The translations under genes were made by a program, and so were the position numbers. A DNA stretch of 64,000 nucleotides, from positions 62,001 to 126,000 of the forward strand of contig JANJGN010000546.1 in the NCBI GenBank assembly GCA_026770705.1, written 5' to 3'. Below, one piece after another: positions 21,738-63,925 of this stretch. Position 1 is the first letter of the stretch, and each line of letters begins with the position of its first letter. Source of the stretch: Isurus oxyrinchus. Its lineage: Eukaryota. Below the pieces are notes generated by a model, which was not told the origin of the DNA, did not search any database, and worked only from the letters and a program-made list of their open reading frames with translations.

Positions 21738-22106
21738 CAGAAACGTGAAGCTGGGTTACAGGGTAATAGTTATGGCTCGGACCATTGTCAAATTCTATTC
21801 TGAAATAATAAGTTCCTGCATCTTCCCGTCTGATGTTGTTTATAATCAGGGAACAGTCGCCATCTTTCAGGTCTCCAGACAGCCGGGTCCGATGGCGGAA
21901 CCGTGGTAACTCGTGACTGTGATCCTTGGAGTGAAAGGCAATGGGAGCCCAGGGAATCTGTTCCTCATTATTAAACCAGAGTCCACCTCGCGGTTGGCTT
22001 TCCAAATGTGATGGGTAACTGTAATGACATGGAATCTGTACACACGAACCTTCCTGCGCTGTCACCTCTCGGGGACTGTCACCTTTCCACTCTTGTGACA
22101 GTCCAA
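21738..22106 (-). CDS. Gene B V-set Ig exon with the essential Arg intact (GTYYFRIE)
   Basis: 369-nt open exon, canonical splice sites, Siglec Cys pattern. Confidence 0.92.
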
Positions 22107-25050: not shown

Positions 25051-25899
25051 CGGAGGTGCCGCTGTGGTGGGTTCATGACCTTCACCATCCGCTTCACTGA
25101 GTTTCGGTTAAAACTGAACTGGAACACACACTAAACACTGATGGAAACCATCACTTCCTCTTCTCCAACATGAAGAGTTTCAGCAGAAGAAGTAAACTGT
25201 TGCTGAAAAGGAACTTTCTTCATCATATCACAGAATCACACAGAATAGCAGGAGGCCATTCATGCCATTTTGGCTGTGCTAGCTCTTTAAAAGAAGCACA
25301 CAATTGGTTTCAATCCACCTCTCTTCCCCCATCGTCCTTCAAATTCTTCCTGTCTCAGATTGAATCCAAATTCATGAATATAAATCCCCTCAGATGGGAG
25401 TAACCATCACTGAGCAGGCAGGTTAGGTTTTATTGTGCACAGCGAGTTGCTGTGATCTGGAAGGTGCTGCCTGAAAGGGCGGTGGAAGCAGATTCAATAG
25501 GATCTTTCAAAATACTTGCAGAGTGTGAGAGAATGGGAGATTGGGACCAATTGGATATCTGTCCCAGGAGACCAGGACAGGGACAATGGGCTGAGTGGCC
25601 TCTTTCTGTGCTGTTTGATTCTGTGGTTTTCTAATATTTATCTGCGCTGCAGATCAGAGACAAACAGGAAACAATAAACTTCTGATCTTTCCACACAGGC
25701 TGAATTGTCATCTCTTTATTTTCAGCCAGTTTGCTTAATTCTTGTGGTTTGGTGGTGAAACTGTGCAGCAAGTGTGAGTGTTGGGTTGTAGATCTGTCTA
25801 TTCTGACTGCTGCTGTGCTCATGGTGACTTCTCAATTACATGAGAGTCTCTGAGATCCTCCACACCCAAGGATTAAGGAGAGACTTCCAAAGATTCAGG

Positions 25900-28800
25900 A
25901 CGCAGTACTGAAGAGGTGCTGCACTGTCAGAGGGTCAGTACTGAGGGAGTGCTGCACTGTCAGAGGGTCAGTACTGAGGGAGTGCTGCACTGTCAGAGGG
26001 TCATTACTGAGGGAGTGCTGCACTGTCAGAGGGTCAGTACTGAGGGAGTGCTGCACTGTCAGAGGGTCAGTACTGAGGGAGTGCTGCACTGTCAGAGGGT
26101 CAGTACTGAGGGAGTGCTGCACTGTCAGAGGGTCAGTACTGAGGGAGTGCTGCACTGTCAGAGGGTCAGTACTGAGGGAGTGCTGCACTGTCAGAGGGTC
26201 AGTACTGAGGCAATGCTGCACTGTCAGAGGGTCAGTACTGAGGGAGTGCTGCACTGTCAGAGGGTCAGTACTGAGGGAGTGCTGCACTGTCGGAGGGTCA
26301 GTACTGAGGGAGTGCTGCACTGTCGGAGGGTCAGTACTGAGGGAGTGCTGCACTGTCAGAGGGTCAGTACTGAGGGAGTGCTGCACTGTCAGAGGGTCAG
26401 TACTGAGGGAGTGCTGCACTGTCAGAGGGTCAGTACTGAGGGAGTGCTGCACTGTCAGAGGGTCAGTACTGAGGGAGTGCTGCACTGTCAGAGGGTCAGT
26501 ACTGAGGGAGTGCTGCACTGTCAGAGGGTCAATACTGAGGGAGTGCTGCACTGTCAGAGGGTCAGTACTGAGGGAGTGCTGCACTGTCAGAGGGTCATTA
26601 CTGAGGGAGTGCTGCGCTGTCAGAGGGTCAGTACTGAGGGAGTGCTGCACTGTCAGAGGGTCAGTACTGAGGGAGTGCTGCACTGTCAGAGGGTCAGTAC
26701 TGAGGGAGTGCTGCACTGTCAGAGGGTCAGTACTGAGGGAGTGCTGCACTGTCAGAGGGTCAGTACTGAAGCAATGCTGCACTGTCAGAGGGTCAGTACT
26801 GAGGGAGTGCTGCACTGTCAGAGGGTCAGTACTGAGGGAGTGCTGTACTATCGGTGGGTCAGTACTGAGGGAGTGCTGCACTGCCAGAAGTTCAGTACTG
26901 AGGGAGTGTTGCACTATCGGTGGGTCAGTACTGAGGGAGTGCTGCACTGTCAGAGGGTCAGTACTGAGGGAGTGCTGCACTGTCAGAGGGTCAGTACTGA
27001 GGGAGTGCTGCACTGTCAGAGGGTCATTACAGAGGGAGTGCTGCACTGTCAGAGGGTCAGTACTGAGGGAGTGCTGCACTGTCAGAGGGTCAGTACTGAG
27101 GGAGTGCTGCACTGTCAGAGGGTCAGTACTGAGGGAGTGCTGCACTGTCAGAGGGTCAGTACTGAGGGAGTGCTGCACTGTCAGAGGGTCAGTACTGAAG
27201 CAATGCTGCACTGTCAGAGGGTCAGTACTGAGGGAGTGCTGCACTGTCAGAGGGTCAGTACTGAGGGAGTGCTGTACTATCGGTGGGTCAGTACTGAGGG
27301 AGTGCTGCACTGCCAGAAGTTCAGTAGTGAGGGAGTGTTGCACTATCGGTGGGTCAGTACTGAGGGAGTGCTGCACTGTCAGAGGGTCAGTACTGAGGGA
27401 GTGCTGCACTGTCAGAGGGTCAGTACTGAGGGAGTGCTGCACTGTCAGAGGGTCATTACTGAGGGAGTGCTGCACTGTCAGAGGGTCAGTACTGAGGGAG
27501 TGATGCACTGTCAGAGGGTCAGTACTGAGGGAGTGCTGCACTGTCAGAGGGTCAGTACTGAGGGAGTGCTGCACTGTCAGAGGGTCATTACTGAGGGAGT
27601 GCTGCACTGTCAGAGGGTCAGTACTGAGGGAGTGATGCACTGTCAGAGGGTCAGTACTGAGGGAGTGCTGCACTGTCAGAGGGTCAGTATTGAGGGAGTG
27701 CTGCACTGTCAGAGGGTCAGTATTGAGGGAGTGCTGCACTGTCAGAGGGTCAGTACTGAGGGAGTGCTGCACTGTCAGAGGGTCATTACTGAGGGAGTGC
27801 TGCACTGTCAGAGGGTCAGTACTGAGGGAGTGCTGCACTGTCAGAGGGTCAGTACTGAGGGAGTGTTGCACTGTCAGAGGGTCAGTACTGAGGGAGTGCT
27901 GCACTGTCAGAGGGTCAGTATTGAGGGAGTGCTGCACTGTCAGAGGGTCAGTACTGAAGCAATGCTGCACTGTCAGAGGGTCAGTACTGAGGGAGTGCTG
28001 CACTGTCAGAGGGTCAGTACTGAGGGAGTGCTGTACTATCGGTGGGTCAGTACTGAGGGAGTGCTGCACTGCCAGAAGTTCAGTACTGAGGGAGTGCTGC
28101 ACTGTCAGAGGGTCAGTACTGAGGGAGTGCTGCGAAGTCAGAGGGTCAGTACTGAAGCAATGCTGCACTGTCAAAGGGTCAATATTGAGGGAGTGCTGCA
28201 CTGTAAGAGGGTCAGTACTGAGGGAGTGCTGCACAGTAAGAGGGTCAGAATTGAGGGAGTGCTGCACTGTCAGAGGGTCAGAAGTGAGGGAGTGCTGCAC
28301 TGTCATAGGGTCAGTACTGAGTGAGTGCTGCACTGTCAGAGGGTCAGTACTGAGGGAGTGCTGCACTGTCAGTGAGTCAGTATTGAGGGAGTGCTGCACT
28401 GTCAGAGGGTCAGTATTGAGGGAGTGCTGCACTGCCAGAAGTTCAGTACTGAGGGAGTGCTGCACTGTCAGTGAGTCAGTATTGAGGCAGTGCTGCACTG
28501 TCAGAGGGTCAGTACTGAGGGATTGCTTCACTATCGGTGGGTCAGAACTGAAGGAGTGCTGCACTGTCAGTGAGTCAGTATTGAGGGAGTGCTGCACTGT
28601 CAGTGAGTCAGTATTGAGGGAGTGCTGCACTATCGGTGGGTCAGTACTGAGGGAGTGCTGCACTGTCAGAGGGTCAGTACTGAGGGAGTGCTGCACTGTC
28701 AGAGGGTCAGTACTGAAGCAATGCTGCACTGTCAGAGGGTCAGTACTGAGGGAGTGCTGCACTGCCAGAAGTTCAGTACTGAGGGAGTGTTGCACTATCG

Positions 28801-30712
28801 GTGGGTCAGTACTGAGGGAGTGCTGCACTGTCAGAGGGTCAGTACTGAGGGAGTGCTGCACTGTCAGAGGGTCAGTACTGATGGAGTGCTGCACTGTCAG
28901 AGGGTCATTACTGAGGGAGTGCTGCACTGTCAGAGGGTCAGTACTGAGGGAGTGCTGCACTGTCAGAGGGTCAGTACTGAGGGAGTGCTGCACTGTCAGA
29001 GGGTCAGTACTGAGGGAGTGCTGCACTGTCAGAGGGTCAGTACTGAGGGAGTGCTGCACTGTCAGAGGGTCAGTACTGAAGCAATGCTGCACTGTCAGAG
29101 GGTCAGTACTGAGGGAGTGCTGTACTATCGGTGGGTCAGTACTGAGGGAGTGCTGCACTGTCAGTGAGTCAGTATTGAGGGAGTGCTGCACTGTCAGAGG
29201 GTCAGTATTGAGGGAGTGCTGCACTGCCAGAAGTTCAGTACTGAGGGAGTGCTGCACTGTCAGTGAGTCAGTATTGAGGCAGTGCTGCACTGTCAGAGTG
29301 TCAGTACTGAGGGATTGCTTCACTATCGGTGGGTCAGAACTGAAGGAGTGCTGCACTGTCAGTGAGTCAGTATTGAGGGAGTGCTGCACTGTCAGAGGGT
29401 CAGTACTGAGGGAGTGCTGTACTGCCAGAAGTTCAGTACTGAGGGAGTGCTGCACTGTCAGAGAGTCAGTATTGATGGAGTGCTGCACTGTCAGAGGATC
29501 AGTACTGAAGCAATGCTGCACTGTCAGAGGGTCAGTTTTGAGGGAGTGCTGCACTGTCAGAGGGTCAGTACTGAGGGAGTGCTGCACTGTCAGAGGGTCA
29601 TTACTGAGGGAGTGCTGCACTGTCAGAGGGTCAGTACTGAGGGAGTGCTGCACTGTCAGAGGGTCAGTACTGAGGGAGTGCTGCACTGTCAGAGGGTCAG
29701 TACTGAGGGAGTGCTGCACTGTCAGAGGGTCAGTACTGAGGGAGTGCTGCACTGTCAGAGGGTCAGTACTGAAGCAATGCTGCACTGTCAGAGGGTCAGT
29801 ACTGAGGGAGTGCTGCACTGTCAGAGGGTCAGTACTGAGGGAGTGCTGTACTATCGGTGGGTCAGTACTGAGGGAGTGCTGCACTGCCAGAAGTTCAGTA
29901 CTGAGGGAGTGCTGCACTGTCAGAGGGTCAGTACTGAGGGAGTGCTGCACAGTAAGAGGGTCAGTACTGAAGAGGTGCTGCACTGTCAGAGGGTCAGTAC
30001 TGAAGCAATGCTGCACTGTCAGAGGGTCAGTATTGAGGGAGTGCTGCACTGTCAGAGGGTCAGTACTGAAGCAATGCTGCACTGTCAGAGGGTCAGTACT
30101 GAGGGAGTGCTGCATTGTCAGAGGGTCAGTACTGAGGGAGTGCTGCACTATCAGAGGGTCAGTACTGAGGGAGTGCTGCACTGTCAGAGGGTCAGTACTG
30201 AGGCAATGCTGCACTGTCAGTGGGTCAGTATTGAGGGAGTGATGCACTGTCATAGGGTCAGTACTGAGGGAGTGCTGAACTGTCATAGGTTCAGTACTGA
30301 GTGAGTGCTGCACTGTCAGAGGGTCAGTACTGAGAGGGTGCTGCACTGTCAGAGGGTCAATGCTGAGGGAGTGCTGCACTGTGGGAGAGACAGTACTGAG
30401 GGAGTGCTGCACTGTCGGAGGGTCAGTACTGAGGCAGAGCTGCACTGTCAGAGGGTCAGTACTGAGGGAGTGCTGTACTAATGGTGGGTCAGTACTGAGG
30501 GAGTGCTGCACTGCCAGAAGTTCAGTACTGAGCGAATGCTGCATTATCGGTGGGTCAGTACTGAGGGAGTGCTGCACTGTCAGAGGGTCAGTACTGAGGA
30601 AGTGTTGCACTGTCAGAGGGTCAGTACTGAGGGAGTGCTAAACTGTCAGAGGGTCAGTACTGAGGGAGTGCTGAACTGTCAGAGGGTCAGTACTGAGGGA
30701 GTGCTGGACTGT
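25900..30712. repeat. 4.8-kb 33-bp satellite array with higher-order periodicity
   Basis: About 145 units; variant monomers recur at 429-bp and 792-bp spacings. Confidence 0.97.
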
Positions 30713-33119: not shown

Positions 33120-36100
33120 TGCTGGTCACGAGTTTGTTGGGACTTATGGATCCAGGCTTGTTTTGGAGAGGCTGAGTAGGTACAATAGACAGAGTAGATC
33201 AGCAGACAGTTCTTAGATGAAACACATTCTGCTTATTTACAAAGGAACTCAGCAGCTACACTTGTGTGCTTTCAACTCAAGCCCTGTCTCCGCATTACAG
33301 GCTCTAACTAAAGGTGACCGACTACTGAGGTACCTGCGCCACTCGGCTGTTGGACACGGATATAAGAGTTAAACAGGGACTTCTATTAGTGAAAACCAAA
33401 GGTCAGCAGAATTCTCCAGGTGAACCTTGTGCACCATGGGGCTGACATCAGCAGAACTCTCCAGAAAGGCCTTGAAGATCACGAGGGATTAACTCGAGAA
33501 GAGACATAAAGAGATGCTGAGGGTAAACAGATAAGGTAAAGGCAAACAGCACCAGGCTAGAACGAGATAAACAGCTCTTGCTTGGGTAAGGAGCAGATAT
33601 GTACCTGGGACTGGGAACATATGCTTATTATGTGATTATGTACTGACAAGATTTGAATTTAAATAACCCAATGTGTACGTGACTAACTCTGTGAACAAAA
33701 AAGATGGTTTCCCTGTAATGGGTAGAGTTCTGTTTTTAGCCAGGCCTGAGGTTGATTCTGAGAACACACCACAACACTGAGCTCATGTTATCTTCCATTG
33801 TAACCTTCTTCTTAAAGGTATATCACACATCAGATTACCACCACCCTCCCCCTTTACTCAGAAATACATTTTACACTTACTTTTACCATTTTCTCAAAGT
33901 ATCAAATGATTTACACAGATCAGTAATTTACAAATTCAGTCTTTCTGGGGGGTTTCCTTATGCGTCTGGAACGTCTCAGATCCACAGCTTCAGATGCTTT
34001 GTCAGGAGTCTCCTTTTCTGATGTTGTCCCAACACCAGCTTCTTCGGTGGACACCTGCAAACCTGTTTCCTCAACTCTTGCAGGTACAACGGACCCTTCA
34101 GACACATCTGTTCTCAGCTGAGTTCTTTCAACAGGAGACATAGACGCAGCCGTGAAGACTGGTGGGAATGTTTCTTGGTACTTTGTTTCTCTCCTCCTTA
34201 TATGACCCACATGTCTCCATATGACTCGGTCTTCCACTTTCACATGGTGAGAAAGAGTTCCAATCGCTGCATTTATTTCACCCGGTGACCACTTTGGCCC
34301 CTCTCTAAAATCCTTCACATATACCGTCTCTCCTACGGTCAGCTTCCTGTCATGACTATGCCAGTCATGTCCAGTTTCCTGTCTTCCTGGACTCCTTTCC
34401 ACCTTCCCGCTGACATTTAGCATGACTGATGTTGCAAATGTGACGTGAGAAAAAACTTTTTCACACAACTAAGTTTTGGGCCTGGATTGCACGGCCTGGA
34501 AGTGTTGTGGAGGCAGGTTCAATCGAGGCATTCAGGAGGGCATTAGATGGTTATTTGGATAGAGAAAAGGTGCAGGGGCATGGGGAAAGGCAGGGCAATG
34601 ACACTAGGTCATGATGCTCATTTGGAGAGCTGGGATAGACACGATGGGCTGAATGGCCTCCTGCTGTGCCATTAAGACTCTGTGATCCTGCAGAGGAGAC
34701 TCTGAAAGGCAAACCGGTTTATTGATACAACCCTTTGTGTGTATTAATTGTGACAAACTTCTGGGAGGCCTTCTCGAACTCCAATTGTTGATAAGCATGG
34801 CTCATATCAGCTCCGTGTAGGCCGTTCCAGTCAATTCTTGTCATCTCCACAAACACTTTGGCCAGGCTCAGGTCCAGGGACTATTGGTGCTGCCCATTCT
34901 GAGGACTGCACAGATTGTATCACTCCCAGTTTCTAGAACCTGCCCAATTCAGCATCTGCCTTTTCCCACATTGCATAAGGTACTGGCCGTGCCTTCATAA
35001 ATCAGAGGGGTAGAGTCTGGATCCACATGAATTTTTGCTTGCAGCCCCTGGATCTCCCCGAGTTCATCTTGGAAAACTGAGATGTATTTTTGTAGTAGCT
35101 CAGGTTGCCCACTGGCTCTCAGTTGGAAGATCTCAGACCAATCCAGTTTAATATCTTTCAGCCAGTTTCGTCCAAGGAGGCTTGGTCCCTCACCAGCTCC
35201 CATCATCAAGGGTCATTTTACTGATTGACTTCCATACTGTATAACAACCCTGCTTATGTCTTTGGCTTGAATGTCTTCTCCCGTGTGAGTTTTCAATTAG
35301 TCATCTGTTTCTTCCAAATTTAATTGACTTTCCCCATGATTCCAGTATTTGAAAGTATGCTCACCAATTAGCGTAATGTTAGCTCCTGTGTCCACCCCCA
35401 TTCTGAGAGCTCTATCATTCACCCTCACTGTTACATAGATTGGCTCTGTTCTTCCTACCTTTAAATTATACAATGAATAACTATCTGAATCTGTTACTTC
35501 AGGCTCTTCTATGTTATGGATCTCACAGGGTTTTCTCTCTTGATTGAAACTCTGCCTGATTCTATCCTTGCAATCTCTCATGGGCTCTCTGTTTCGATGA
35601 CAGTAAAAACAATTGATTTTTTTAAAGTTCCATTCACTACGAGGTTGTCTGCTTCACCTCTGTTCACATTATTCCATGTTTTCTCTGCTAAGTCATTCCT
35701 TTTTATTTGCTGCTAGTGGTGGACGTTTCCCGTTTCTCATCAGAGCTGTACATTTTCCCGCACTTCTTGGCTGAGGCTCCTCACCCAACATGAGGACGGT
35801 GACATTTTGCACTCTCCATATGTTTTTCGAGTCCCTCACTGCTCTTTCCATAGCCAGCACTATTCCCAGAGCTTTCTGAATATCCAAATCTGTTTCAGAC
35901 AGTAATCTCTTCTGAATCGAATCTTCATTTATACTGCACACCAGTTGATCTCTCAGCATATCATTTATAGATTTACCAAACTCACAATGTCCTGTTAACT
36001 GTTTCAGACTTTCCACATAACATGCAGCTGCCTCCCCTGGGACTCTATTTCTTGAGTTAAATTTGGACCGTTGCATCGTTACCGAGGGCTGGGGCTGGGA

Positions 36101-36490
36101 AGGAATCTTCACAAGGTTTACTATATCATCTAAACTTTTTGAATCCATGGCACCGGGTGGCATTAAAGTTCGCATCAATCCCTAAATCTTACTGCCACAC
36201 GTGGATAAGAGGGTCGCTCGCCTCTTCTCCTCCCCATCAATGTCATTCACTTGGAAAAAGAACGCGAGGAGTTCACCATAATGGGACCAATCGCCCACCG
36301 TTGGGTCGAAAGGATCAACTCTTCCAAACTGCAGCATTCTTCGAGGGGACTGCTTCGGTTATTAGGATGGAAATTATATTTATAATCACTGCGTGAGGCA
36401 CAGCCCGATTTCAGTTCCCTTGCTCTCATTCCTTGATTTTTCTTCCTTGTTTTTCACCTCATCACCAGTTTATTCAACCCTTGTCACTAC
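33120..36490 (-). mobile_element. Ty3/Gypsy LTR retrotransposon (gag, protease, partial pol; probable 3' LTR)
   Basis: Gag QRSKFNSR..DMLRDQLVC, protease VDTGA, LLGRNWL, integrase C-terminus VYVKDFREGPKW, PPT near 33840-33860, PBS-like TGGTGATGAG near 36460. Confidence 0.85.
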
Positions 36491-37665: not shown

Positions 37666-38530
37666 GTAATATCATCGTCAGCTCAGACAGATTTATGGTT
37701 AATAGTCTTCGTAAAAGATCATTCTTATTGAGCTGTGATTCGGAACCAATTCAGCAGTGACCCAGTGCACAAACTCACACCAACTCCCATTCACCCATCA
37801 CCCCTGTGCTCCCTGATATACACTGACTCCCTGTCTGACAGCAGAATTGGGGGAGTGCAGAGATCACAGATGGTTGTAGGTTTGAGTAGGTTACAGAGAC
37901 AGGGAGTGGAGCGGAGTGATGGAGGGATTGGAAATCAAGTGTGAAAATAATCACATCGAGGTGTTGTTGGACTGGGAGCCAGTGTAGGTCAGCGAGTGAC
38001 TTGTGGGGTCGGGGTGGGTGTGTGCGGAGGTGAAAGCTTGAGTGGAAAATTGGACACAAAATTCAGGGGATGAAGTCTATCTTGTGGCTAGCACTCTGAC
38101 AGCAATGGCCTGAAATTAGTGTCTTTTGCTGATTTTAATCAGAATTTCCCATGAAGACAACACAGCAGCTCCTAGAATAGACAGGCTGTTCAGTGTCACA
38201 CTTCCTGTCCATTCTCACCATGCTAGATACTTCAGTAAGGGAGCAAGATAACTGAAAGAGAGAAGGAAGGTAAAGCTGTCTGTGTGTAAAGGTGTCAATA
38301 TTCAGTTTGCATATTTGTCTTTGCTCTTGACACAGGCAGAGCTCAAGCTAGAGGCACTGTGTTAGTGTGTTTCACAGGGTCTGCTGGAGTAGGGTCAGTG
38401 CTGAGCTTGGGGACAAGTCAGTCTACAATGCTGCATCGGAATCAACAATACAACAATATGGGGTTTGGATCAGAAATAATCCCTTAGACAATGAGGATCC
38501 AGGGTTAAATATTGATATTTCTCTCCACAG

Positions 38531-38899
38531 TTGGACTGTCACAAGAGTGGAAAGGTGAAACTCCACGAGAGGTGACAGCGCAGGAAGGTTCGTGTGTACA
38601 GATTCCATGTCATTACAGTTATCCATCGTGTCTGGAAAACCAACCGCGAGGTGGAGTCTGGTTTAATAATGAGGAACAGATTCCCTGGGCTCCCATTGCC
38701 TTTCACTCCAAGGATCACAGTCACGAGTTACCACGGTTCCACCATCGGACCCGGCTGTCTGGAGACCTGAAAGATGGCGACTGTTCCCTGATTATAAACA
38801 ACATCAGACGGGAAGATGCAGGACCTTATTTTTTCAGAATAGAATTTGACAATGGTCCGAGCCATAACTATTACCCTGTAACCCAGCTTCACGTTTCTG
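38531..38899 (+). CDS. Gene C V-set Ig exon (open frame; GPYFFRIE)
   Basis: CCACAG acceptor, G|GTAAGT donor, 369 nt, close to the gene B V exon. Confidence 0.88.
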
Positions 38900-40214
38900 G
38901 TAAGTGCTGTGTTATAATTACTCAACAATTCACATTCAACACTCAATGGGAAATAACACAAACTGTGACATTTACATATTAACACAAAACACAGCTTATT
39001 ATAACAGACTGTCTGATTCTCAATAACCTGGTGATAGCTTCCAGTTCAGTCCTTAAGCAACCTCTAATACTCACTTTAATATCAATGATTAAATGTATTG
39101 ACTGTGTCCATCAATGCTATCAGGTTATCCACTCCCATTAGTCTCCCTAATGCTTTTTAAAAGTCTAACAATTTGACAAAAGAAGGATGTGCATTCCTAT
39201 TGCGCCTTACACCACCTCAGCAAACTTCAAATCACTTCACAGACAATGAAGAAATTCTTGAAGTATAGTCACTGTCTAACGTGGCAGTGAGTTTGTGCAC
39301 AGGAAGATCCCATAGAGAGCAATGGGATCACTGACCCAGATCTCTGAGAGAATGATGAGCCAGGGTTCCATGAGCTGTGGGCTGCTCCATCACCCACACC
39401 CCAGTGTTGGCAATTCAAGGGTCTGGGAGTGAAAGTGTATTCAGCTCAGTGACACATTCCCCACCAAGTTTGAAAATAGGAAAGTTGCTGCTGATTGTTG
39501 TTACCTCTCAGTTCCCATCTCATCCTTGGAAACCTGCTTTCAAAATACAAAAGCAAGTCTCGCATTTCCATAGCGCCTTTCACCACTTCAGGACGATACT
39601 AAATCAATTCACAGTCAATGAAGTGATTCTTGAAGCACACATTCTCCCCACTCTCTGGGTAAAGAAGTTTCTCCTGAATTCCCCATTGGATTTATTAGTG
39701 AGGATGTTATATTGTCAGCCTCTGGTTTTGTTCATTGTGAGGAGTGGAAACACTCTCCCCATGTCTACTCGATCAAAACCTTTCATTACTTCAAAGGTCA
39801 AATGAGGTCACCCCTCAACCTTCTCTGTTCAAGAGAACAGAGACCCAGCCTGTTCATCCTCTCCTGATAGGTAAAGCCTCACATTGCTGAGATCATCCTT
39901 GTGAAGCTTTTTACCACCCTCTCCAGTGTCTCCATATCCTTTTCCAAATGCTGAGTCTGTTCTCCCCGAGCTGTGAGCTGTTCCTCCACCCTCACCCAGT
40001 CTGGTCAAATCAAGGGTCACTGAGTGAGCGTGTATTAATCTGAGTGACAGAGATTCAACAAGTGTAAAAATAGACAATTCTTTAATGATCATTGTAACCT
40101 CTCAGTTCTGATATCATCCTTGTAAAAGTGCTTTCTCTTGTGGGACTGTGATTTCTATTTGAAATGATGCTTCACGTTATATTTCTCTAAAAGGATCCAT
40201 TCTCTGTCTGTTAG

Positions 40215-40511
40215 ATTTCACAGATAAACCCACGATATTCCCTGCTGAAATTATTGCAGGAAAGCGTGTGGATGTAAGCTGCACCTTCAACACAACGTGC
40301 AATGGAACAGCAGCACCTGTCTTAACCTGGGACACTCCCACTGACGTACCTGGATCAGTCTCAAACACTGTAACTCAGCATGGTGTCACTCTGACCTATA
40401 CTTCTGTTCTGACCCTGATCCCATCACTCAAACACCACGGACACACTCTCAGCTGCAGAGTGAGATATCCATCTGTTTCATCGGAGCGGACCCTCGTACT
40501 GACTGTGCTAT
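40215..40511 (+). CDS. Gene C C2-set Ig exon
   Basis: 297 nt, TTAG acceptor and GTAAGT donor, near-identical to the B copies. Confidence 0.88.
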
Positions 40512-40689
40512 GTAAGTACAAACACCCTTCAATCTACATTAGCTGGAATAGTATCAAATGTGCACAGCAAGCTCCCACATACTGCACTTTGTTTATAAAC
40601 AAACCATTGGTATTTAACTGGTAAAAAGTGAGCCCTGACAGGCAGTACATCCTTACTACTGACTCTCCGATAGTGCATCATGGACTCAT

Positions 40690-52149: not shown

Positions 52150-52705
52150 TCCTCACACATTCACTTGCACACTCACACACCCACACCCACACAGACACAC
52201 TGACACACTCACTCATTCACATTGACACACACTGACACAGTCACACACACCCACACAGACACACTGACACACTCACTCATTCACATTGACACACACTGAC
52301 ACAGTCACACACACCCACACAGACACACTGACACTCTCACTCATTCACATTGACACACACTGACACAGTCACACACACCCACACAGACACACTGACATAC
52401 TCACTCATTCACATTGACACACACTGACACAGTCACACACACACACACACACGCTGACACAATCAAACACATTCACATTGACATGCACTGACAGTCACAC
52501 ATACACACACACACGCTGACACAATCACACACATTCACATTGACACACACATATTGACAGTCACACATACACACACACACTCACTCATAAAGACAGACAC
52601 AAACACAGCCACGCACACACTAACACATACTCACACACACTCACTCACGCACACACACACTGATACACTCAAACACTCACAGACACACACATACTCACAC
52701 ATAAA
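52150..52705. repeat. CA-rich compound microsatellite with ~62-bp units
   Basis: Repeated ACACAGACACACTGACACACTCACTCATTCACATTGAC block. Confidence 0.85.
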
Positions 52706-53195
52706 CAAAGAAGTTTACATTATAAACACTATAAACACAAGTTAGATTCAAAGTGCAGTATATTGGTACAAAAAATAGGTCATAATGAAAACTTCAATAT
52801 GAGATCGTCACTAATAAATCCAATGGGGATTTCAGGAGAAATCTCTTTACCCAGACAGTGGGGAGAATGTGGAACTCGCTCCCACAGAGAGTGGTCGAGG
52901 TGAATAGTGTCGATGTATTTAAGGGGAAGCTGGATAAACACACGAGGGAGAAATGAATAGAAGGATATGGTGATGGGGTGAGATGGAGAAGGGGTGGGCG
53001 GAGACTCGTGTGGATCAGAAACTCCAGCATGGAACAGATGGGCCAAATGGCTTCTTTACCTGCTGTAAAACGCAGGTAAAGTTTCAGTTGGAATTAATGA
53101 ACAGGGCCTGTGTGAAATAGATTGCTAAGCAGTAGATAAGGAGGGGAGAGGCTGTGGCATGGTGCAGGATGACCTTGCGTGAATGAGGCCAGGGT

Positions 53196-53312
53196 CTAAT
53201 ATCTACAGCAGAGACCACAAGTCTCATTTGGTTCTCTCCAATTACAGCAGTGACAGCAGAATCTGCAGAGCTGCTGTCTGCTCATTCTCTTCTGGCGCTG
53301 CAGCAAGGAGCC
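53196..53312 (-). CDS. HAMP: Hepcidin-like gene exon 3: GSLLQRQKR|MSRQQLCRFCCHCCNWREPNETCGLCCRY*
   Basis: CTGCTTTTCCAG acceptor, phase 0, RQKR furin site, C-x2-CC-x-CC-x8-C-x2-CC eight-cysteine hepcidin pattern. Confidence 0.9.
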   Translation of the reverse strand, partial: GSLLQRQKRMSRQQLCRFCCHCCNWREPNETCGLCCRY

Positions 53313-53419
53313 CTGGAAAAGCAGGAGCACAATAGGTGAGAACATTCCGGAAAGAAAGAAGGCACCGCCTCCCTTTGACTCTGGCATCATTTCAATCAGG
53401 CACGTCATTGGAAGGAGGA

Positions 53420-54100
53420 TGGCGCATTTCTATAGCGCCTTTCCCCTCCTCAGGATGGCCAAAAATGTTCAACAGCAGATGGAAGGACTTTTTCTGAAGT
53501 GAGCTCACCGCTGTAATGTAGGAAACGCAGCAGGCAATTCACGCACAGCAAGATCCCACAAACAGAAATGTGATAATGGCCCCGATTTTCAGTTTTTTAC
53601 CAATGTCAGTTGAGGGATAAATGTTTGCCCCAGGAAAGCGGACATAACTCCACCCCATCCAGCCCCCACCACCCCCTCCACACATACCCCCCAACTCCTG
53701 ACGCACTTCATTTAAATTGTGGCCATGGAATCCTCTACATCCATCTGAGAGGGCAGATGTTGTCTCAGTTTAACATCTCATCTGAAAGACAGCACCTTCA
53801 ACAGTGCAGCACCCCCTCAGTACTGACCCTCCGACTGTGCAGCACTCCCTCAGTACTGACCGTCTGACAATGCAGCACCCCCTCAGTACTGACCCTCCAA
53901 CAGTGCAGCACTCCCTCAGTACTGACCGTCTGACAATGCAGCACCCCCTCAGTACTGACCCTCCGACTGTGCAGTCCCCCGCCGGTACTGACCCTCTGAC
54001 AGTGCAGCACTCCAAGACTGACTGTCTGACAATGCAGCACCCCCTCAGTACTGACCCTCCGACTGTCCTGCCCCCCCGCCGGTACTGACCCTCCGACAGC
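53420..54100 (-). mobile_element. DeuSINE-like SINE whose end expands into the 33-bp satellite
   Basis: Minus strand reads ..GTGCTGCACTGTTGAAGGTGCTGTCTTTCAGATGAGATGTTAAACTGAG..CCCTCTCAGATGGATGTAG, resembling the Deu domain. Similar element at about 55790-56345. Confidence 0.65.
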
Positions 54101-55631
54101 TCGGTAATTTCTCAATTATGCCTGGTGGTCCTTTTAACTCAGAGCAGAGAGTCGCAGAGAATCGAGCAGACACCCTGAACTGACACTTGCAGTGCAAGTA
54201 CTGGGAGCGCGCTGGTCATTATCATGCTGCTGTCTGTGGGATCTTACTGTGCGCCAATGGCTGATTCTTTTCCCACAGTACATCAGTGACCTCACATGAA
54301 AGAAAAAAAGCACTTGATTGTCTGCGAAACACTTTGGGACGTCCTGATGTGTTGGAAGGCGCTAGAGAAATGCAAGTCCTCTTTGTCTTTCACTCGATCC
54401 TCTAAGGTGTCTGTTGATTAACCAGCCTCTCGGTGTTTGATGTAGGCCTGGTTATAAACAGTTAGAAGGATCAAATATCAAAAGTGCTTTGGCTGACAGT
54501 CAAACCGATTGTGCATTCGGAGAGATAAGATATGGTCTGCACACAATGACTCCAGTCTCTGGCACTGACTGCCGCCTGGGGTCTCCCTTCCACATAACAC
54601 TCACAACTTGCATTTACACAGCGCCTCTGACATTGCAAAATGTCCCAGCCCACATTACCGGAGCGTAAATCAGAGAGAAGTCTAACACTGAGTCACATAT
54701 GGAGATATTAGGGATAGGTGACCAAAAGCTTGGTCAAAGATGTCAGTTTTTAAGGAGCGTCTTAAAGGAGAGAGAGAGAGAGAGGCAGAGAGGTTAAGGG
54801 AGGGTATTCCGGAGCTCAGGGCCCCAGGCAGCTGAAGGCACGGCCACCAATGGTGGAGCGATGGGAATCAGGGGGACCCGGGAGATGCAGTAATGTCAGA
54901 GATTTTGGAGGAACATCGGGACCGGAGGAGGTGTTCTCCTGCTCCATATCTCTCTCTCTCTTCCTCTCATCCACTCCTCCTCTCCCTGTCTCTCTCTCCT
55001 ACTCTTCCTCTCAATTGCCCTCTCTCCCAATCTTTCTCTCCTCTCTCCCTTTTCCTGTCTCTCTCCCTCTCTCTCTCCCTGTCTCCTTCTCCCACTCTGT
55101 ATCTCTCCCTCTCTCTCACACTATTTTTGTACCTTTCGCTCACTCTGTAACTCTCCCTTTCCTGTTAATTTCTCTCTCTTGGACAATCTCTCTTCCCTTT
55201 TCACTTTCCCTCACTCTGCATCTCTTTAATTTCTCCCTCTGTCACTCTCTCCCACCTATGTTCTTTCCCTTTCACCCCTCCCCGTCCCACTCTCTGTCTC
55301 TCTCTTCCAATCCCTCCCTCCCCCATTCCATCCCTCTCTCCGACTCTCGACTCCCAGCCTCTCTTTAACCCACTCCCAGGCTGGATCAGTCTCCCTCTCA
55401 CTATCCCGGCGTGGGTTACATTTAAAATTCCTGTGGGGATATGTTCACTTCCTTGGAATTGTCTCTTCCCAGCTTTGCAAAAAAAGTTGGGTGGGGGGGG
55501 CTCGATTTCAAACCTGCCTCCTGAGTATAACCGAGACAGACTGCCACTGAAATCAGCTTGAAATCAGAAAACTTTCTGTGGAAGAAACGAGCAGGGAGAA
55601 ACCTTAAAATAAGGAATGAATTTCCACCTAC

Positions 55632-55688
55632 CGTGTCCGGGGAATCCACAGATTTCTCAATCGTCGAAGAACCTAAAGCAGTGTCAAC
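55632..55688 (-). CDS. HAMP: Hepcidin-like gene exon 2 (propeptide VDTALGSSTIEKSVDSPDT, 57 nt, phase 0-0)
   Basis: TTCTCTCTTTTTGCAG acceptor and ACG|GTAGGT donor; size and phase fit a HAMP exon 2. Confidence 0.75.
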
Positions 55689-56404
55689 CTGCAAAAAGAG
55701 AGAATTTATCAGGGAGAAAGTGAGAGGAGGATTGAGGGAGAGGGAGAGAGAGAGAGAGAGGTACAGGAGAGAGAGGGGGAGGAAGACAGACTTGCATTTC
55801 TCTAACGCCTTTCACCACATCCCAAAGCATTTCACAGCCACTGAAGGATGTTTTTGAAGTGCACTCACACTGTAGGAAATGTGGCAGCTGATTTGTGCAC
55901 AGCAAGATCCCACAAATAGCAATGTGATCATGGCCTAGATCATCTGTTTTTGGTGATGTTGGTTGAGGGATAAATATTGGTCCCAGGACACCGGGGAGAA
56001 CACCCCCTGCTCTTCCTCCAAATAGTGGCTGTGGGATCTTTCACACCCGCCCGAGAGGGCAGACGGGGGACTCAGTTTAATGTCTCATTCAACATTGTTG
56101 CGCTCCCTCAGTACTAACCCTTTGACACTGCAGCACTCCCTTAGTATTAACCCTTCGATAGTGCTGCGCTCCCTCAGTACTGTCCCTCCGTCAGTGCAGC
56201 TCTATTTCAGTACTAACCCTTCGACACAGCAGCACTCCCTCAGTACTGACCTCCGACAGTATAGCACTCCCTCAGTACTGTCCCTCCAATAGTGCAACTC
56301 TTCCACACTACTGACCCTCTGAGAGTGCAGCACTCCCTCAGCACGGAGCGTTGATCTACATTATGGGACTGAATTCCCTGGAGTGAGACTCAGACCAGTG
56401 ATTT

Positions 56405-57915
56405 AGGTAGGGTTGTGGGGGCTGGAGGAGGTTACAGAGATAGGGAGGGCTGTAGAGGCTGTAGGAGGTTACAGAGAAAGGGAGGGTTGTAAGGGCTGTA
56501 GGAAGTTACAGAGATAGGGAGGGTTGTAGAGGCTGTAGGAGGTTACAGAGATAGGGAGGGTTGTAGGGGCTGGAGGAGGTTACAGAAATAGGGAGGGCTG
56601 TAGAGGCTGTAGGAGGTTACAGAGATAGGGAGGGTTGTAAGGGCTGTAGGAAGTTACAGAGATAGGGAGGGTTGTAGAGGCTGTAGGAGGTTACAGAGAT
56701 GGGGGAGTTGTGGGGGCTGGAGGAGGTTACAGAGGTAGGGAGGTGTGTAGGGGCTGTAGGAGGTTACAGAGATGGGGTGGTTGTGGGGGCTGGAGGAGGT
56801 TACAGATGTAGGGAGGGTTGTAGAGGCTGGAGGAGGTTACCAAAATAGACACTGCTGTAGGGGCCACAGTAGGTTACAGAGATAGGGAGAGTTATAGTGT
56901 GGAGAGTTCAGGAGGATTGTAGGGGCTGGAGGAGGTTACAGTGATTGTGAGGGTTGTGGGGCCTGGAGGATTTTAAAGAGATAGGGAGGGTTGTAGGGTC
57001 TGGAGCAGGTTACAGAGATAGGGAGGGTTGTAGGGTCTGGAGCAGGTTACAGAGATAGGGAGGGTTGTAGGGTCTGGAGCAGGTTACAGAGATAGGGAGG
57101 GTTGTAGGGTCTGGAGGAGGTTACAGTGATCGTGAGTGTTGTGGGGCCTGGGGGAGGTTACAGAGATAGGGAGTGTTGTGGGGACTGTAGGAGGTTACAT
57201 AGATAGGGAGGGTTGTCGGGTCTGGAGGAGGTTACAGAGATAGGGAGGGTTATAGGGACTGGAGGAGGTTACAGAGATAGGGAGGGTTGTAGAGACTGTA
57301 GGATGTTACAGAGATAGGGATTGTTGTAGGGGCTGGAGGATGTTACAGAGATAGGGAGGGTTGTAGGGGCTGGAGGAGGTTACAGAGATAGGGAGGGTTG
57401 TAGGGGCTGGAGGAGGTTACAGAGATAGGGAGGGTTGTACGGGCTGGAGGAGGTTACAGAGATAGGGAGGGTTGTAGGGGCTGGAGGAGGTTACAGAGAT
57501 AGGGAGGGTTGTAAGTCCTGGTGGAGGTTACAGAGATAGGGATTGTTGTAGGGGCTGGAGGAGGTTACAGAGATAGGGAGGGTTGTAGCGGCTGGAGGAG
57601 GTTACAGAGATAGGGAGGGGTGTAGGGGCTGGAGGAGTTTACAGAGATAGGGAGGGTTGTACGGGCTGGAGGAGGTTACAGAGATAGGGAGGGTTGTAGG
57701 GGCTGGAGGAGGTTACAGAGATAGGGAGGGGTGTAGGGGCTGGAGGAGGTTACAGAGATAGGGAGGGTTGTAAGGCCTGGTGGAGGTTACAGAGATAGGG
57801 AGGGTTGTAGGGGCTGGAGGAGTTTACAGAGATAGGGAGGGTTGTAAGGCCTGGTGGAGGTTACAGAGATAGGGAGTGGCTGAGGAGGGATTGAAAACAA
57901 GAATGAGAATTTCAG
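56405..57915. repeat. 37-bp minisatellite array with an adjoining L2 ORF2 C-terminal stub, in hepcidin intron 1
   Basis: About 40 units; the stub translates on minus as EILILVFNPSSATPYLCNL. Confidence 0.92.
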
Positions 57916-58053
57916 GGGAAACGACAGAAGGAAATGATGTTAAATTCATAGAGGGCGACAATATTAAAGGCACGAACTTAATAATATCAAACTGCGGAAG
58001 AGACCAGTCTATCTGGGTGGTAGACGTAGAGTCATGTGCAAGAAACACCTCAC

Positions 58054-58170
58054 CCAGAGGGACATCTCTTAGCTTAACCTCGACAAGGAGAAGAAGTGAC
58101 TCAGCTGCAGGGAGAGCAGCAAAGTCAGAGTGAACAAGACAAGTCGCCATTTCATCTGGGAGCTTCCCAT
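58054..58170 (-). CDS. HAMP: Hepcidin-like gene exon 1, signal peptide MGSSQMKWRLVLFTLTLLLSLQLSHFFSLS; 3' boundary defective as assembled
   Basis: Basic/hydrophobic signal peptide below a TATAAG box. AG|GTTAAG donor (58079) is out of phase; TGG|GTGAGG donor (58054) is in phase but follows TAA at 58069-58071. Confidence 0.65.
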
Positions 58171-58241
58171 CTCTGCCTGTCTCTTCTGATCTTCTGGCTC
58201 TGCTTTGATGCTTTGGTTTGTAACTAGAGGAGCTTCCTGCT

Positions 58242-58431
58242 CTTATACCTGAAACACTTGAAGGGGACAGCCGCGGGTGGGTAGCTGTGTGGTATCACAC
58301 CCATTTCTGGATATTGCAGTGTCGATGTTCCCTGTCCCACTGGCCTGGGACCAGCAGTAAGGTCACTGGGACATTGACTGTCTGGCGCCGAGAACTATCA
58401 GTCCCTCCGCAACGCCCTTCACCTTGTGCAA
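58242..58431 (-). promoter_or_regulatory. Candidate hepcidin promoter: TATAAG (58242-58247), GGCGCC next to AGAC SMAD element (58380-58389), C/EBP-like TTGTGCAA (58424-58431)
   Basis: Motif matches only, in a non-repetitive island upstream of exon 1. Confidence 0.5.
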
Positions 58432-61764: not shown

Positions 61765-63130
61765 CTGTAAACTTGTTGTGATACTGTAACTGCCTCTTTG
61801 GTTTCATTCAGCTGAATCTTCAGCTCTTCAGTCTCTTCCTTGTATCTCTTGCCTTCCTCCTGGAACATTGGACATGGTTGGGTCTTCCCTGCCAACTGTT
61901 TCTTCAGTTTGCTCAGAGCGGCACAGAATTCGCTTTCTTTCTCTTCAGGATTTTCCAGTGGAACCAACTCTGACCTGAGGGACACTTGCAGCCTGTGAGG
62001 ATGCTTCAATTCTTCAAACTCATTCCGAGATACACTCTCATATTCCCCCAGCAACTCAGCAACTCCTCCAGTGAAACATTTCAGAGCAGCTGAGCTTGGT
62101 TTTCTGGAACCAGTCTCGGCCCAGAAGACTAGGGCCCTCACCTGTCGCTATGATCACTGGAAGCTGGGCTGTCTGCTGCCTGTAGGACACAGGTACTGGG
62201 ATGAGGTCCTTTCCCTGTATGGATTCTCCAGTGTGTGTCTTCAGCTGATCCATTGTTGGCTCTAAATTCAGCGTCTGGGTTCCTTCATTTAGCTGTTTAA
62301 ATGTGGGCTCTTCCACCACTGTGTCTGAGGCTCCCGTATCTGCCCCATTACTAGTGGCTGCCCATTCACTTGGGTTGTGATGGTTATAGGTTCAGTTTTT
62401 ACCACTGTGACATTGGACAGGGAATAGACATCGGTATCAGCAGCTTCAGGCTCTGTGATATTATTCACTTCCATCATGTTGGTGCACTGCCTGATGGGCT
62501 GTCTCGATTTCACCCTGCATTGCTTTATTACCTGCCCCTTTCTTGTGGCAGTGATGGCATTCTGCCCCCTTGAACCTGCAGGTGTCCAGTACGTGCTCAA
62601 TGCCCCCCACATCGAGAACAGGCCAACTTCGGAGTTGCTGCTGAAATACTCCCACGAAGCCTTTTAGTTTCTGGAGCGGCAGAGACTGTCTCTCGCTTGG
62701 CGGCTGTCTCTCTCTCTCTCTCTCCAGTTTGAGCCTCACGCCCGGTGGTTGGTTCCTGTCCCAGCTGAGGACTGGCGCCATGTTGTACATCCTGTAAATC
62801 CCGCCAGTCTCTCCCAGCACTTTCCATGCCTGGCGCTATTTCCATAGTGCGCTTCAAATCGATGTCGGCTTCTGCGAGTAAACGGCTCTGAATGGCGTTG
62901 GGGTGAACGACACAAACCAATCGGCCCCGCAACATGTCATTGAGTGTGTCTCCGAGGTCCCAGTGCTCAGTCACCTGCTTCCACTTCATTGTATAGGTTG
63001 CGATGGACTCTCCCTGGGCCCTTACTCTGGAGTTAAACTTAAACCTCTGCATTATTACCCACGGCTTCAGCTGAAAATACATCTTCATGAGGTCGACTAA
63101 TTGGTGAAAAGATTTAGAATTGGGTGCAAT
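61765..63130 (-). mobile_element. Ty3/Gypsy gag-protease remnant
   Basis: IMQRFKFNSRVR, DMLRGRLVC, CSRCGGH knuckle, GEGPSLLGRDW; same family as 33120-36490. Confidence 0.85.
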
Positions 63131-63415
63131 ACACGTCACTGTCTTCAGCTCTGAGACTGTCAATCCTCACCGAACAATTCTTCCCTTCCAAGTCGCCGAT
63201 TATTTTAGCACGTCCCACGAATGTGGCCATCCCATAATTGGGATCTTTGGTGTATGTGACGGTATATTTCCATCTATACCAATATTTATACCAAGCTCCG
63301 TGCAGTGCTGTGTAAGAGTGGGAAGGAAAGTCAAAGCTACACGGAATAACCACACAAGAGCTGCTGATGGCCCTCAGAGGCAGCGCCTTCATAGACCATC
63401 CCTCTGACGTCACTC
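63130..63415 (-). pseudogene. Gene D: MAG/Siglec-like V-set exon truncated at the F strand
   Basis: TTTCAG acceptor, then SCVVIPCSFDFP..HGAWY..FVGRAKIIGDLEGKNCSVRI..DSDVY, then direct fusion to gag sequence and TAA at 63114-63116. Confidence 0.82.
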
Positions 63416-63479
63416 CTGAAAGGCAACAAGGGAAGAGACAGGACATCAAAAAGCAGAATATTACTTCAATGGAGAGAGG

Positions 63480-63925
63480 CAGCAGAATGCGGTACAGAGG
63501 GATCTGGGTGTCCTTGTACATGAATCACAGAAAGTCAGCATTCAGGAACAGCACGGAATGATGAAGGCAAGTGGAATGTTGGCCTTTATTGCAAAAGGAT
63601 GGAGTATAAAAGGAGGGAAGTCTTGCAACAGCTGCACAGGGCGTTGGTGAGATTGTATCAGGAGCAGTGTGTACAGTTCTGGTCTCCTTACTTAGGGAGG
63701 GATAGACTCTGCATTGGAGGCAGCTCAGAGGAGGATCACTGGGCTGATTCCCGGGATGAAGGGGGTTTGTCTTATGAGGAAATGTTGAGCAGGTTGGGCC
63801 CTGTATCCATTGGAGTTTAGAAGAATGAGAGGTGATCTTATTGAAACATATAAGATTCTGAGGTGGTGGGGGGTTTGACAGGGTGGATGCTGAGGGGATG
63901 TTACCCCTTGTGGGGGAATCCTGTG
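63480..63925 (+). mobile_element. CR1 LINE 3' ORF2 fragment
   Basis: MEYKRREVLQQLHRALVR..CVQFWSPYL. Confidence 0.85.

What the first reader, a model, noticed from the sequence alone, without database searches (positions are those of the whole stretch)
53196..58170. Cryptic three-exon hepcidin (HAMP)-like gene buried in repeats
Seen: three small minus-strand exons give a signal peptide, a 19-aa propiece, and GSLLQRQKR followed by a 29-aa peptide with eight Cys (CRFCCHCC..CGLCC). Known: hepcidins have three exons, an R-x-K/R-R furin site and this Cys spacing, and the human precursor is 84 aa. Inference: an 83-88 aa precursor if the exon 1 junction is repaired. The ORF track does not show it as a gene, so automated annotation could easily miss it in a cartilaginous fish.
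Basis: partly seen in the sequence, partly recalled or inferred. Interest (0 to 1): 0.95.

Follow-up and report, generated by a model that had tools for sequence, protein, structure and literature searches.

The report
Expressed shark hepcidin gene, flawed copy
This is a genuine three-exon gene for hepcidin, the small cysteine-rich hormone that controls iron, and it is abundantly transcribed in this species; the copy in this window has one changed letter at its first splice site, so it may be a dead copy or an assembly slip.

Summary

- **Family match:** the exon 3 peptide (window:53199-53312:-) matches Pfam Hepcidin PF06446 at 32.5 bits, above the cut-off of 27. It has an RQKR cleavage site and eight Cys.
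- **Expression:** two RNA-like runs of the same species show exon bins about 100-1000x deeper than intron bins.
- **Gene model:** exon 1 therefore ends at 58078, in phase 0. The precursor is 31+19+38 = 88 aa.
- **The "broken" junction** is one letter. The window has T at intron 1 position +1 (58077, minus strand). A DNA run of the same species and one of a relative read G, giving a canonical GTAAGC donor. As written, the nearest GT gives a stop after 35 codons.
- **Which copy is expressed:** the window also differs from the reads at several intron and 3'UTR sites. It is therefore not the copy or haplotype seen expressed.
- **Neighbours:** Siglec/CD22-like exons, as around human HAMP.
- **Earlier scan notes:** the scan has noted hepcidin genes on at least eight other pieces of this genome. 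I could not read those pieces. Contig depths hint at many copies.

Verdict: a new member of a known family with an atypical mature peptide. The shark origin was not verified here.

The parts
58242..58247 (-). TATAAG box, 77 nt upstream of the ATG; likely core promoter
   Evidence: Motif scan. RNA depth falls upstream of exon 1 (bin 58173-58350). The transcription start itself is not shown, because contigs cannot show starts.
58380..58389 (-). GGCGCC followed directly by AGAC: candidate BMP/SMAD response element at -219
   Evidence: Motif scan. There is one hit in 1.5 kb, and about 0.1-0.4 is expected by chance, so this is a lead only. No STAT site (TTCNNNGAA) was found in 1.5 kb.
58078..58170 (-). 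Exon 1 coding part: 31 codons holding the signal peptide, ending in phase 0
   Evidence: The joint 55688|58078 is seen in 2 contigs of X1 and 8 contigs of X2. The Kozak context is G at -3 and G at +4.
58077..58077 (-). Intron 1 position +1. The window has T (A on the + strand). Reads of the same species (X4) and of a relative (X12) have G, giving AGG|GTAAGC.
   Evidence: table 3: 58077 A>C in X4 at depth 889.7 of 889.7, and in X12 at 9.31 of 9.31. As written, the nearest GT (58078-58077) gives a 92-nt coding part and a stop after 35 codons.
55689..58077 (-). Intron 1 (2389 nt), mostly minisatellites
   Evidence: Joint. Tandem arrays 56404-57876 (37-bp unit, 40 copies) and 56103-56341 (33-bp unit).
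55632..55688 (-). Exon 2: 19 codons of the propeptide, phase 0 at both ends
   Evidence: Depth peak in bin 55555-55741 (70,934 in X1 and 144,979 in X2, against tens to about 1,000 in neighbouring bins) and both joints. Translation.
53313..55631 (-). Intron 2 (2319 nt), GT..AG
   Evidence: Joint 53311/55631 with 'cut +1', ends CT..AC on the + strand, in 5 contigs of X1 and 9 of X2.
53196..53312 (-). Exon 3 coding part: end of the propeptide with the RQKR site, the mature peptide, and the stop
   Evidence: Pfam PF06446, 32.5 bits against a cut-off of 27. Best solved relative is bass hepcidin 1S6W. Deepest RNA bins.
53199..53285 (-). Predicted mature peptide: 29 aa, eight Cys, 8-residue loop with an N-E-T sequon, pI 8.2, net charge about +1.5
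   Evidence: The cleavage position is inferred from the R-x-K-R rule, not shown.
52897..53195 (-). 3'UTR, at least to 52897
   Evidence: RNA depth of 2x10^5 to 7x10^5 in bins 52937-53310. At 52897 the RNA contigs leave the window's sequence and continue with letters that match 52606-52585. There is no AATAAA or ATTAAA on this strand before 51958.

Best explanation
This is a hepcidin (HAMP-family) gene on the minus strand.

**How it works.** A TATA-type promoter drives a three-exon transcript encoding an 88-aa prepropeptide. Exon 1 gives the signal peptide, exon 2 a 19-aa propiece, and exon 3 the end of the propiece, an RQKR proprotein-convertase site and a 29-aa mature peptide with eight Cys. 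By analogy with other hepcidins, the peptide is secreted, cut after RQKR and folded into a hairpin with four disulfides. It then acts on ferroportin to lower iron export, and may also act as a cationic antimicrobial peptide.

**What is shown.**
- Family membership.
- The exon borders.
- Very strong transcription of this gene, or of near-identical copies, in the species.
- Conservation in a relative.

**What is inferred.** Cleavage, fold, target and tissue.

**Status of this copy.** The window differs from all reads by a G-to-T change at the first base of intron 1. My odds:
- About 55%: a real difference of this copy or haplotype. That would make it a mis-spliced null member of a multi-copy family.
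- About 40%: an assembly error.
- About 5%: real but tolerated.
For: - **Family:** Pfam Hepcidin sits above its curated cut-off for the exon 3 peptide. The closest solved chain is bass hepcidin, sharing CRFCC, the CC pair and CG-x-CCR.
- **Transcription:** in runs X1 and X2, exon bins reach 6x10^4 to 7x10^5, while most intron bins are at 10 to 10^3, some repeat-bearing ones higher (table 2).
- **Splicing:** joints 55632|53312 (GT..AG) and 58078|55688 are carried by 7 and 17 contigs in all. All three exons are in phase 0.
- **Donor site:** the DNA run X4 and the relative X12 read G at 58077, which gives a consensus donor (table 3).
- **Conservation:** contigs of organism C cover exons 1, 2 and 3 at about 96-97% identity, with no gap in the exon 3 piece (table 8). 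Twenty runs from 9 studies and 4 organisms hold part of the exon 3 stretch.
- **Signal peptide:** it has the expected features.
- **Neighbourhood:** the neighbours are Siglec/CD22-type V-set and C2-set exons. Human HAMP lies beside MAG and CD22 (own knowledge). PMC4453067 places HAMP with USF2 in the mammalian FFAR2 locus and names MAG as a marker near FFAR2 on human chromosome 19.
- **Literature:** hepcidin has been detected in nurse shark plasma (PMC9207270). The hepcidin-binding Cys of ferroportin first appears in cartilaginous fish (PMC8235187).
Against: - As written, the window's intron 1 starts with TT. The only nearby GT shifts the frame and gives a stop after 35 codons.
- RNA contigs differ from the window at 53058 (100% of the depth). 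They leave the window's sequence at 52897. They carry the same intron differences as DNA run X4: 54146, 54153, 54527, 55514, +TCT at 55222 and +T at 55403. So transcription of this very copy is not shown.
- The N-terminus of the mature peptide lacks the His3 found in human and teleost iron-type hepcidins. The loop is 8 residues rather than 4-5.
- The tissue of X1 and X2 is unknown, and their RNA nature is inferred from the splicing.
- Two large protein searches found no relative. Neither search can reach far with a 38-aa Cys-rich query.
Confidence: 0.87

Rival explanations
1. The window copy is fully intact and functional. The T at 58077 is a consensus error of the assembly, and this locus is the one hepcidin gene that the RNA comes from.
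For: No contig in any of the four runs carries the window's letter at 58077. The same-species DNA run reads G at full depth. All coding letters of the window agree with the bulk of the RNA (table 3). A +1 donor change in an essential hormone gene would be selected against.
Against: The window also differs from X1, X2 and X4 at seven or more other sites and by a 282-nt stretch in the 3'UTR. It is therefore a different haplotype or copy, and 58077 may be just one more real difference. Logan contigs drop rare variants, so the absence of T there proves nothing. Scan notes report other, intact copies elsewhere, which would relax selection on this one.
Confidence: 0.4
2. It is a hepcidin-family peptide that works only as an antimicrobial or immune peptide (like teleost HAMP2-type genes), not as the iron hormone.
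For: There is no His at position 3 and no DTH/QSH-like start. The core is most like bass hepcidin, a HAMP2-type peptide (the type assignment is own knowledge). It is cationic, with pI 8.2. There are hints of many copies with changes in the mature peptide (records 25/26; scan notes), a pattern typical of antimicrobial peptide families.
Against: Six residues precede the first Cys, as in the iron-type peptides. Leu precedes Cys1 and Phe stands at position 9, as in human hepcidin (own knowledge). The HAMP1/HAMP2 split is a teleost event. Cartilaginous fish ferroportin carries the hepcidin-binding Cys (PMC8235187), so some hepcidin must serve it. The net charge is only about +1.5.
Confidence: 0.3
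3. It is not a gene: a chance Cys-rich ORF or a dead relic among repeats.
For: It is not visible as a long ORF. It is surrounded by minisatellites and transposon pieces.
Against: The Pfam hit is above threshold. The transcripts are spliced at exact GT..AG borders and at very high depth. The exons are conserved in a relative.
Confidence: 0.02

Closest known systems
Human HAMP / hepcidin-25 (84-aa precursor)
   Same: Three exons. Signal peptide, propiece, and a polybasic convertase site directly before the mature peptide. Eight Cys in the order C, CC, CC, C, CC. Six residues before the first Cys. A neighbourhood of Siglec-family genes (MAG, CD22).
   Different: The mature peptide is 29 aa rather than 25. 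The loop between the second CC pair and the next Cys has 8 residues rather than 4 and carries an N-E-T sequon. There is no Asp-Thr-His copper/nickel-binding start. USF2 was not seen in the window.
Teleost hepcidins, e.g. hybrid striped bass hepcidin (PDB 1S6W)
   Same: This is the best solved match. It shares CRFCC-x-CC, CG-x-CCR and an aromatic C-terminal residue. It is a cationic liver peptide.
   Different: The shark-type loop is 3 residues longer. The N-terminal extension differs. The phmmer E-value is only 0.8 because the chain has 21 residues.
Nurse shark plasma hepcidin (PMC9207270)
   Same: This shows that elasmobranchs make and secrete a hepcidin, and that genome annotation (whale shark) can lack it.
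   Different: No sequence was available to compare: no hit in the one supplementary file held as text. The gene structure and copy number are not described there.
LEAP-2
   Same: A small liver-expressed Cys-containing peptide made from a three-exon gene with a convertase site.
   Different: LEAP-2 has four Cys and belongs to another Pfam family. The only Pfam hit here is Hepcidin.

Membership tests
Hepcidin (Pfam PF06446, HAMP) | Profile match above the curated gathering score | tested here: met
   32.5 bits against a cut-off of 27, E = 1.1e-07. Profile positions 24-52 of 53 are matched.
Hepcidin (Pfam PF06446, HAMP) | Eight Cys in the pattern C-x2-CC-x-CC-xn-C-x2-CC | tested here: met
   The pattern is present once in the window, with n = 8. 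In bass hepcidin n = 5; in human n = 4 (own knowledge).
Hepcidin (Pfam PF06446, HAMP) | R-x-K/R-R convertase site directly before the mature peptide | tested here: met
   RQKR lies at residues 6-9 of the exon 3 peptide. Cleavage itself was not tested.
Hepcidin (Pfam PF06446, HAMP) | N-terminal signal peptide | tested here: met
   A basic n-region (K, R) followed by a hydrophobic core, with an 11-residue Kyte-Doolittle mean of 2.51. No dedicated predictor was at hand.
Hepcidin (Pfam PF06446, HAMP) | Three coding exons spliced into one small mRNA | tested here: met
   Both joints were found in RNA-like runs of the species. For the window's own copy, the intron 1 donor reads TT, so its own splicing is not shown.
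Hepcidin (Pfam PF06446, HAMP) | Hairpin fold with four disulfides | tested here: inconclusive
   AlphaFold2 without an alignment gave pLDDT 70 and pTM 0.38, with helices. This is not a usable model.
Hepcidin (Pfam PF06446, HAMP) | Liver expression, induced by iron and inflammation | not testable with these tools
   The runs are coded and no tissue is given. Only very high transcript depth is seen.
HAMP orthologue by position | Conserved neighbours (USF2, MAG, CD22 in human) | tested here: inconclusive
   Siglec/CD22-like V-set exons exceed the PF24518 cut-off (34.7-39.5 bits against 27). A sialoadhesin/MAG-like V-set exon lies at 63114-63521. USF2 was not looked for exon by exon. Gene order differs from human.
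Iron-regulatory hepcidin (ferroportin ligand) | N-terminal ferroportin-binding segment with His3 (DTHFPI in human, QSHLSL in teleost HAMP1) | tested here: not met
   The start is M-S-R-Q-Q-L. The length (6) and the Leu before Cys1 are kept, but His3 is replaced by Arg. The comparison motifs are from own knowledge.

The most novel reading that the evidence does not exclude
Hepcidin has been amplified to ten or more copies in this lineage, duplicated together with Siglec genes. The copies diverge mainly in the mature peptide. The window's copy is a freshly disabled member, with the donor +1 changed from G to T.

Hints:
- In the same-species DNA run, contigs over the locus have depth 500-890. Divergent sister contigs of identical span have depth 12-52 (records 25/26 and 32/31). 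Those ratios are not allelic.
- Very small runs of a relative, 53-122 million letters, still hold the locus.
- The Thr/Met variant at 55633 makes up about 20% of the joint depth in X1 and about 85% in X2, although both are from one sample.
- The scan's own unchecked notes list hepcidin genes of differing span on at least eight other pieces of the genome.
Probability: 0.45. Interest if true: 0.65.

Novelty: new member of a known kind. Interest (0 to 1): 0.42.

Why it matters
Hepcidin and ferroportin form the central iron-control pair of vertebrates, and cartilaginous fish are the earliest branch said to have the hepcidin-binding cysteine in ferroportin (PMC8235187). In the papers searched, the only shark hepcidin data found were a listing of hepcidin among nurse shark plasma proteins (PMC9207270). 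A gene model with RNA support would give:

- a sequence to synthesise and test on the species' ferroportin;
- a case where small multi-exon peptide genes hidden among minisatellites may escape annotation;
- an atypical mature peptide (long loop, glycosylation sequon, no His3) that bears on which features of the hormone are ancestral.

If the multi-copy reading holds, it would be an expansion of hepcidin outside teleosts. This window would then show how copies die.

Tried and rejected
- **The search for homologous proteins** on the 70-aa ORF holding exon 3, region 31-70: no candidate shared three 5-residue words. This blank says little.
- **The search of protein representatives** with the 38-aa exon 3 peptide: no hit at E <= 0.001. 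A 38-aa query cannot reach significance against 1.8 billion proteins.
- **AlphaFold2** on the 38-aa peptate alone: low confidence and helical, so it was not used and not sent to fold search.
- **Supplement of PMC9207270** searched for a nurse shark hepcidin sequence: nothing held.
- **The search of earlier findings by sequence**: blank.
- **Other ways to make exon 1 fit as written**, all rejected:
  - the GT at 58078-58077, which gives a stop after 35 codons;
  - a second acceptor after CTTTAG inside exon 2, which gives a stop;
  - skipping exon 2, which is out of frame;
  - the ATG at 58150 in the +1 frame, which is in phase but encodes an acidic, non-signal leader.
- **Poly(A) signal search**: none on this strand between the stop and 51958, so the 3' end is not placed.
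- **Joined model:** the joined 88-aa model was not sent to any search or fold tool. Exons were searched apart by reference. The only joining was a translation inside a script, to read the frame.
- **Taxon:** not verified, because organism names are coded.
Full report
**What is in the sequence.**
- **Exon 1:** an ATG at 58170, in a good Kozak context, opens a leader with a basic start and a strongly hydrophobic core.
- **Exon 2:** 55688-55632 is a 57-nt exon between an AG and a GT.
- **Exon 3:** 53312-53196 encodes 38 residues and a stop. These are the end of a propiece, RQKR, and 29 residues with eight Cys spaced C-x2-CC-x-CC-x8-C-x2-CC.

A six-frame scan finds this motif only once in the 64 kb window. 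The introns are mostly minisatellites: a 37-bp unit repeated 40 times at 56404-57876, and 33-bp arrays at 56103-56341 and 53801-54099.

**Family.**
- The exon 3 peptide, given by reference, matches Pfam Hepcidin (PF06446) with 32.5 bits against a curated cut-off of 27.
- Among solved structures, the best match is hybrid bass hepcidin 1S6W. It shares CRFCC-x-CC and CG-x-CCR, and the alignment needs a gap in the loop.
- Two very large protein searches gave nothing. For a 38-residue Cys-rich query this carries little weight.
The exons were treated apart.

**Transcription and splicing.**
- One search for sequencing runs, using the exon 3 stretch, found 20 holders from 9 studies and 4 coded organisms.
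- I laid four runs on 52750-58350: X1 and X2 (small, RNA-like, organism A), X4 (DNA, organism A) and X12 (organism C).
- In X1 and X2 the three exon-bearing bins reach 6x10^4 to 7x10^5. Most intron bins lie between 10 and 10^3.
- Contigs join 55632 to 53312 (5 and 9 contigs, GT..AG on the minus strand).
- Contigs also join 58078 to 55688 (2 and 8 contigs).
- These joints show that X1 and X2 are RNA, which the tool itself only guessed.
- All three exons are therefore in phase 0, and the precursor has 31+19+38 = 88 residues.

**The 'broken' exon 1 end.**
- The RNA keeps one more G than a GT..AG reading of the window allows.
- The reason is a single letter. At 58077 the window has A on the + strand, which is T at intron position +1.
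- The same-species DNA run X4 reads C there at full depth (889.7 of 889.7), and so does the relative X12 (table 3). That is G on the minus strand.
- With G, the donor is AGG|GTAAGC, which is canonical.
- With the window's T, the only GT lies one base upstream. It gives a 92-nt coding part and a stop after 35 codons.
- Other rescues fail: a second acceptor, skipping exon 2, and the ATG at 58150.

**Is this copy the expressed one? Probably not.**
- The RNA reads C, not the window's A, at 53058, in all of its depth.
- RNA contigs leave the window's sequence at 52897 and go on with letters that match 52606-52585. They therefore lack 282 nt (52615-52896), whose ends are not GT..AG.
- The intron-bearing contigs of X1 and X2 share with X4 a set of differences from the window: 54146, 54153, 54527, 55514, +TCT at 55222 and +T at 55403.
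- So the window is another haplotype or another copy than the majority sequence. 58077 may simply be one more real difference.
- Logan contigs drop rare variants, so the lack of T in X4 does not prove an assembly error.
- I put a real difference at about 55%, an error at about 40%, and a tolerated odd donor at about 5%.

**One gene or many.**
- The scan's own notes are unchecked, and I cannot read those pieces. They list hepcidin genes of spans from 4201 to 5446 letters on at least eight other pieces of this genome. Several are called intact, and some windows hold two copies that differ in the mature peptide.
- In one search, X4 has two contigs of the same 112 nt of exon 3, at depth 501 (1 other letter) and 52 (5 other letters). 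At exon 1 the pair is at 889.7 and 12.2. Ratios of 10:1 and more are not allelic.
- Very small runs of organism C still hold the locus.
- A Thr/Met variant in the last codon of exon 2 (55633) makes up about 20% of the joint depth in X1 and about 85% in X2, although both are from one sample.
- The tool warns that depth is not copy number, and I had no control locus. This stays a hint, which I rate at about 45%.

**Surroundings.**
- The window is a Siglec cluster. V-set exons at 2011-2499, 15022-15372 and 21655-22125 (all minus) and at 38512-38982 (plus) match V-set. All but the truncated 15022-15372 exon (22.9 bits) also exceed the CD22 first-domain family cut-off.
- C2-set exons follow at 13437-13736, 20547-20825 and 40268-40624.
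- A further V-set exon at 63114-63521 (minus) is closest to sialoadhesin and MAG.
- In human, HAMP lies next to MAG and CD22 on 19q13 (own knowledge; locus content partly in PMC4453067). The position therefore fits orthology, though the order differs and USF2 was not seen.

**Promoter.**
- A TATAAG lies 77 nt before the ATG.
- A GGCGCC directly followed by AGAC lies at -219, which resembles BMP/SMAD elements of HAMP promoters.
- No STAT site was found in 1.5 kb.
- One hexamer hit is weak evidence.

**How it most likely works.**
- Shown: a secretory leader, a convertase site, the hepcidin Cys frame and massive transcription.
- Inferred from the family: cleavage after RQKR, a hairpin with four disulfides, binding to ferroportin, and possibly direct antimicrobial action (pI 8.2, charge about +1.5).
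- The mature peptide keeps six residues before Cys1, with Leu before Cys1 and Phe at position 9.
- It lacks His3, and its 8-residue loop carries an N-E-T sequon.
- Whether it is an iron hormone, a defence peptide or both is open.
- The literature states that cartilaginous fish ferroportin has the hepcidin-binding Cys (PMC8235187), and lists hepcidin among nurse shark plasma proteins while whale shark annotation lacks an orthologue (PMC9207270).

**Novelty and score.**
- It is a new member of a known family. That hepcidin exists in elasmobranchs is not new.
- The gene model, the atypical peptide, the flawed donor and the possible expansion are the points of interest.
- The taxon was not verified here.
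- A single-sequence structure prediction was uninformative.

Noticed in passing
window 52615-52896 (minus strand, 3'UTR): RNA contigs of X1 and X2 jump from 52897 to about 52614, so they lack 282 nt that the window has. The ends are not GT..AG. This looks like a structural difference between the window's copy and the expressed one, not an intron.
   Followed up: partly
window 55633: The last codon of exon 2 has a Thr/Met (ACG/ATG) variant in the RNA. It makes up about 20% of the joint depth in X1 and about 85% in X2, although both runs are labelled as one sample.
   Followed up: no
window 54447 and 53200-53279: There are two minor RNA forms. In X2, exon 2 is joined to an acceptor at 54447 inside intron 2 (depth 844). 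In X1, one contig skips 80 nt inside exon 3, with non-canonical ends, and is possibly an assembly artefact.
   Followed up: no
window 2011-2499, 15022-15372, 21655-22125 (minus); 38512-38982 (plus); C2-set exons 13437-13736, 20547-20825 (minus), 40268-40624 (plus): This is a cluster of near-identical Siglec/CD22-like V-set and C2-set exons, including an inverted pair, which points to recent duplications around the hepcidin gene.
   Followed up: partly
window 63114-63521 (minus): A separate V-set exon is closest to sialoadhesin and MAG (E = 1.6e-10 and 6.5e-09). It lies upstream of the hepcidin gene on the same strand.
   Followed up: partly
window 25895-30610: A 4.7 kb array of a 33-bp unit stays open in frames of both strands (ORFs of 1571, 802 and 850 aa made of an 11-residue repeat). 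The same unit forms the small arrays in both hepcidin introns.
   Followed up: no
window 33920-34468, 35693-36178, 62597-63163, 15513-16145 (all minus): These ORFs look like retroelement pieces by eye (gag-like, integrase-like, reverse-transcriptase tail). The one tested, 62597-63163, matched no Pfam family. They sit between the Siglec genes and the hepcidin gene.
   Followed up: no
window 58148 and 58079: There are two coding variants in exon 1. Trp to Leu at codon 8 is seen in 5-11% of the RNA depth, and it is the only form in organism C. Arg to Lys in the last codon of exon 1 is seen in organism C.
   Followed up: no
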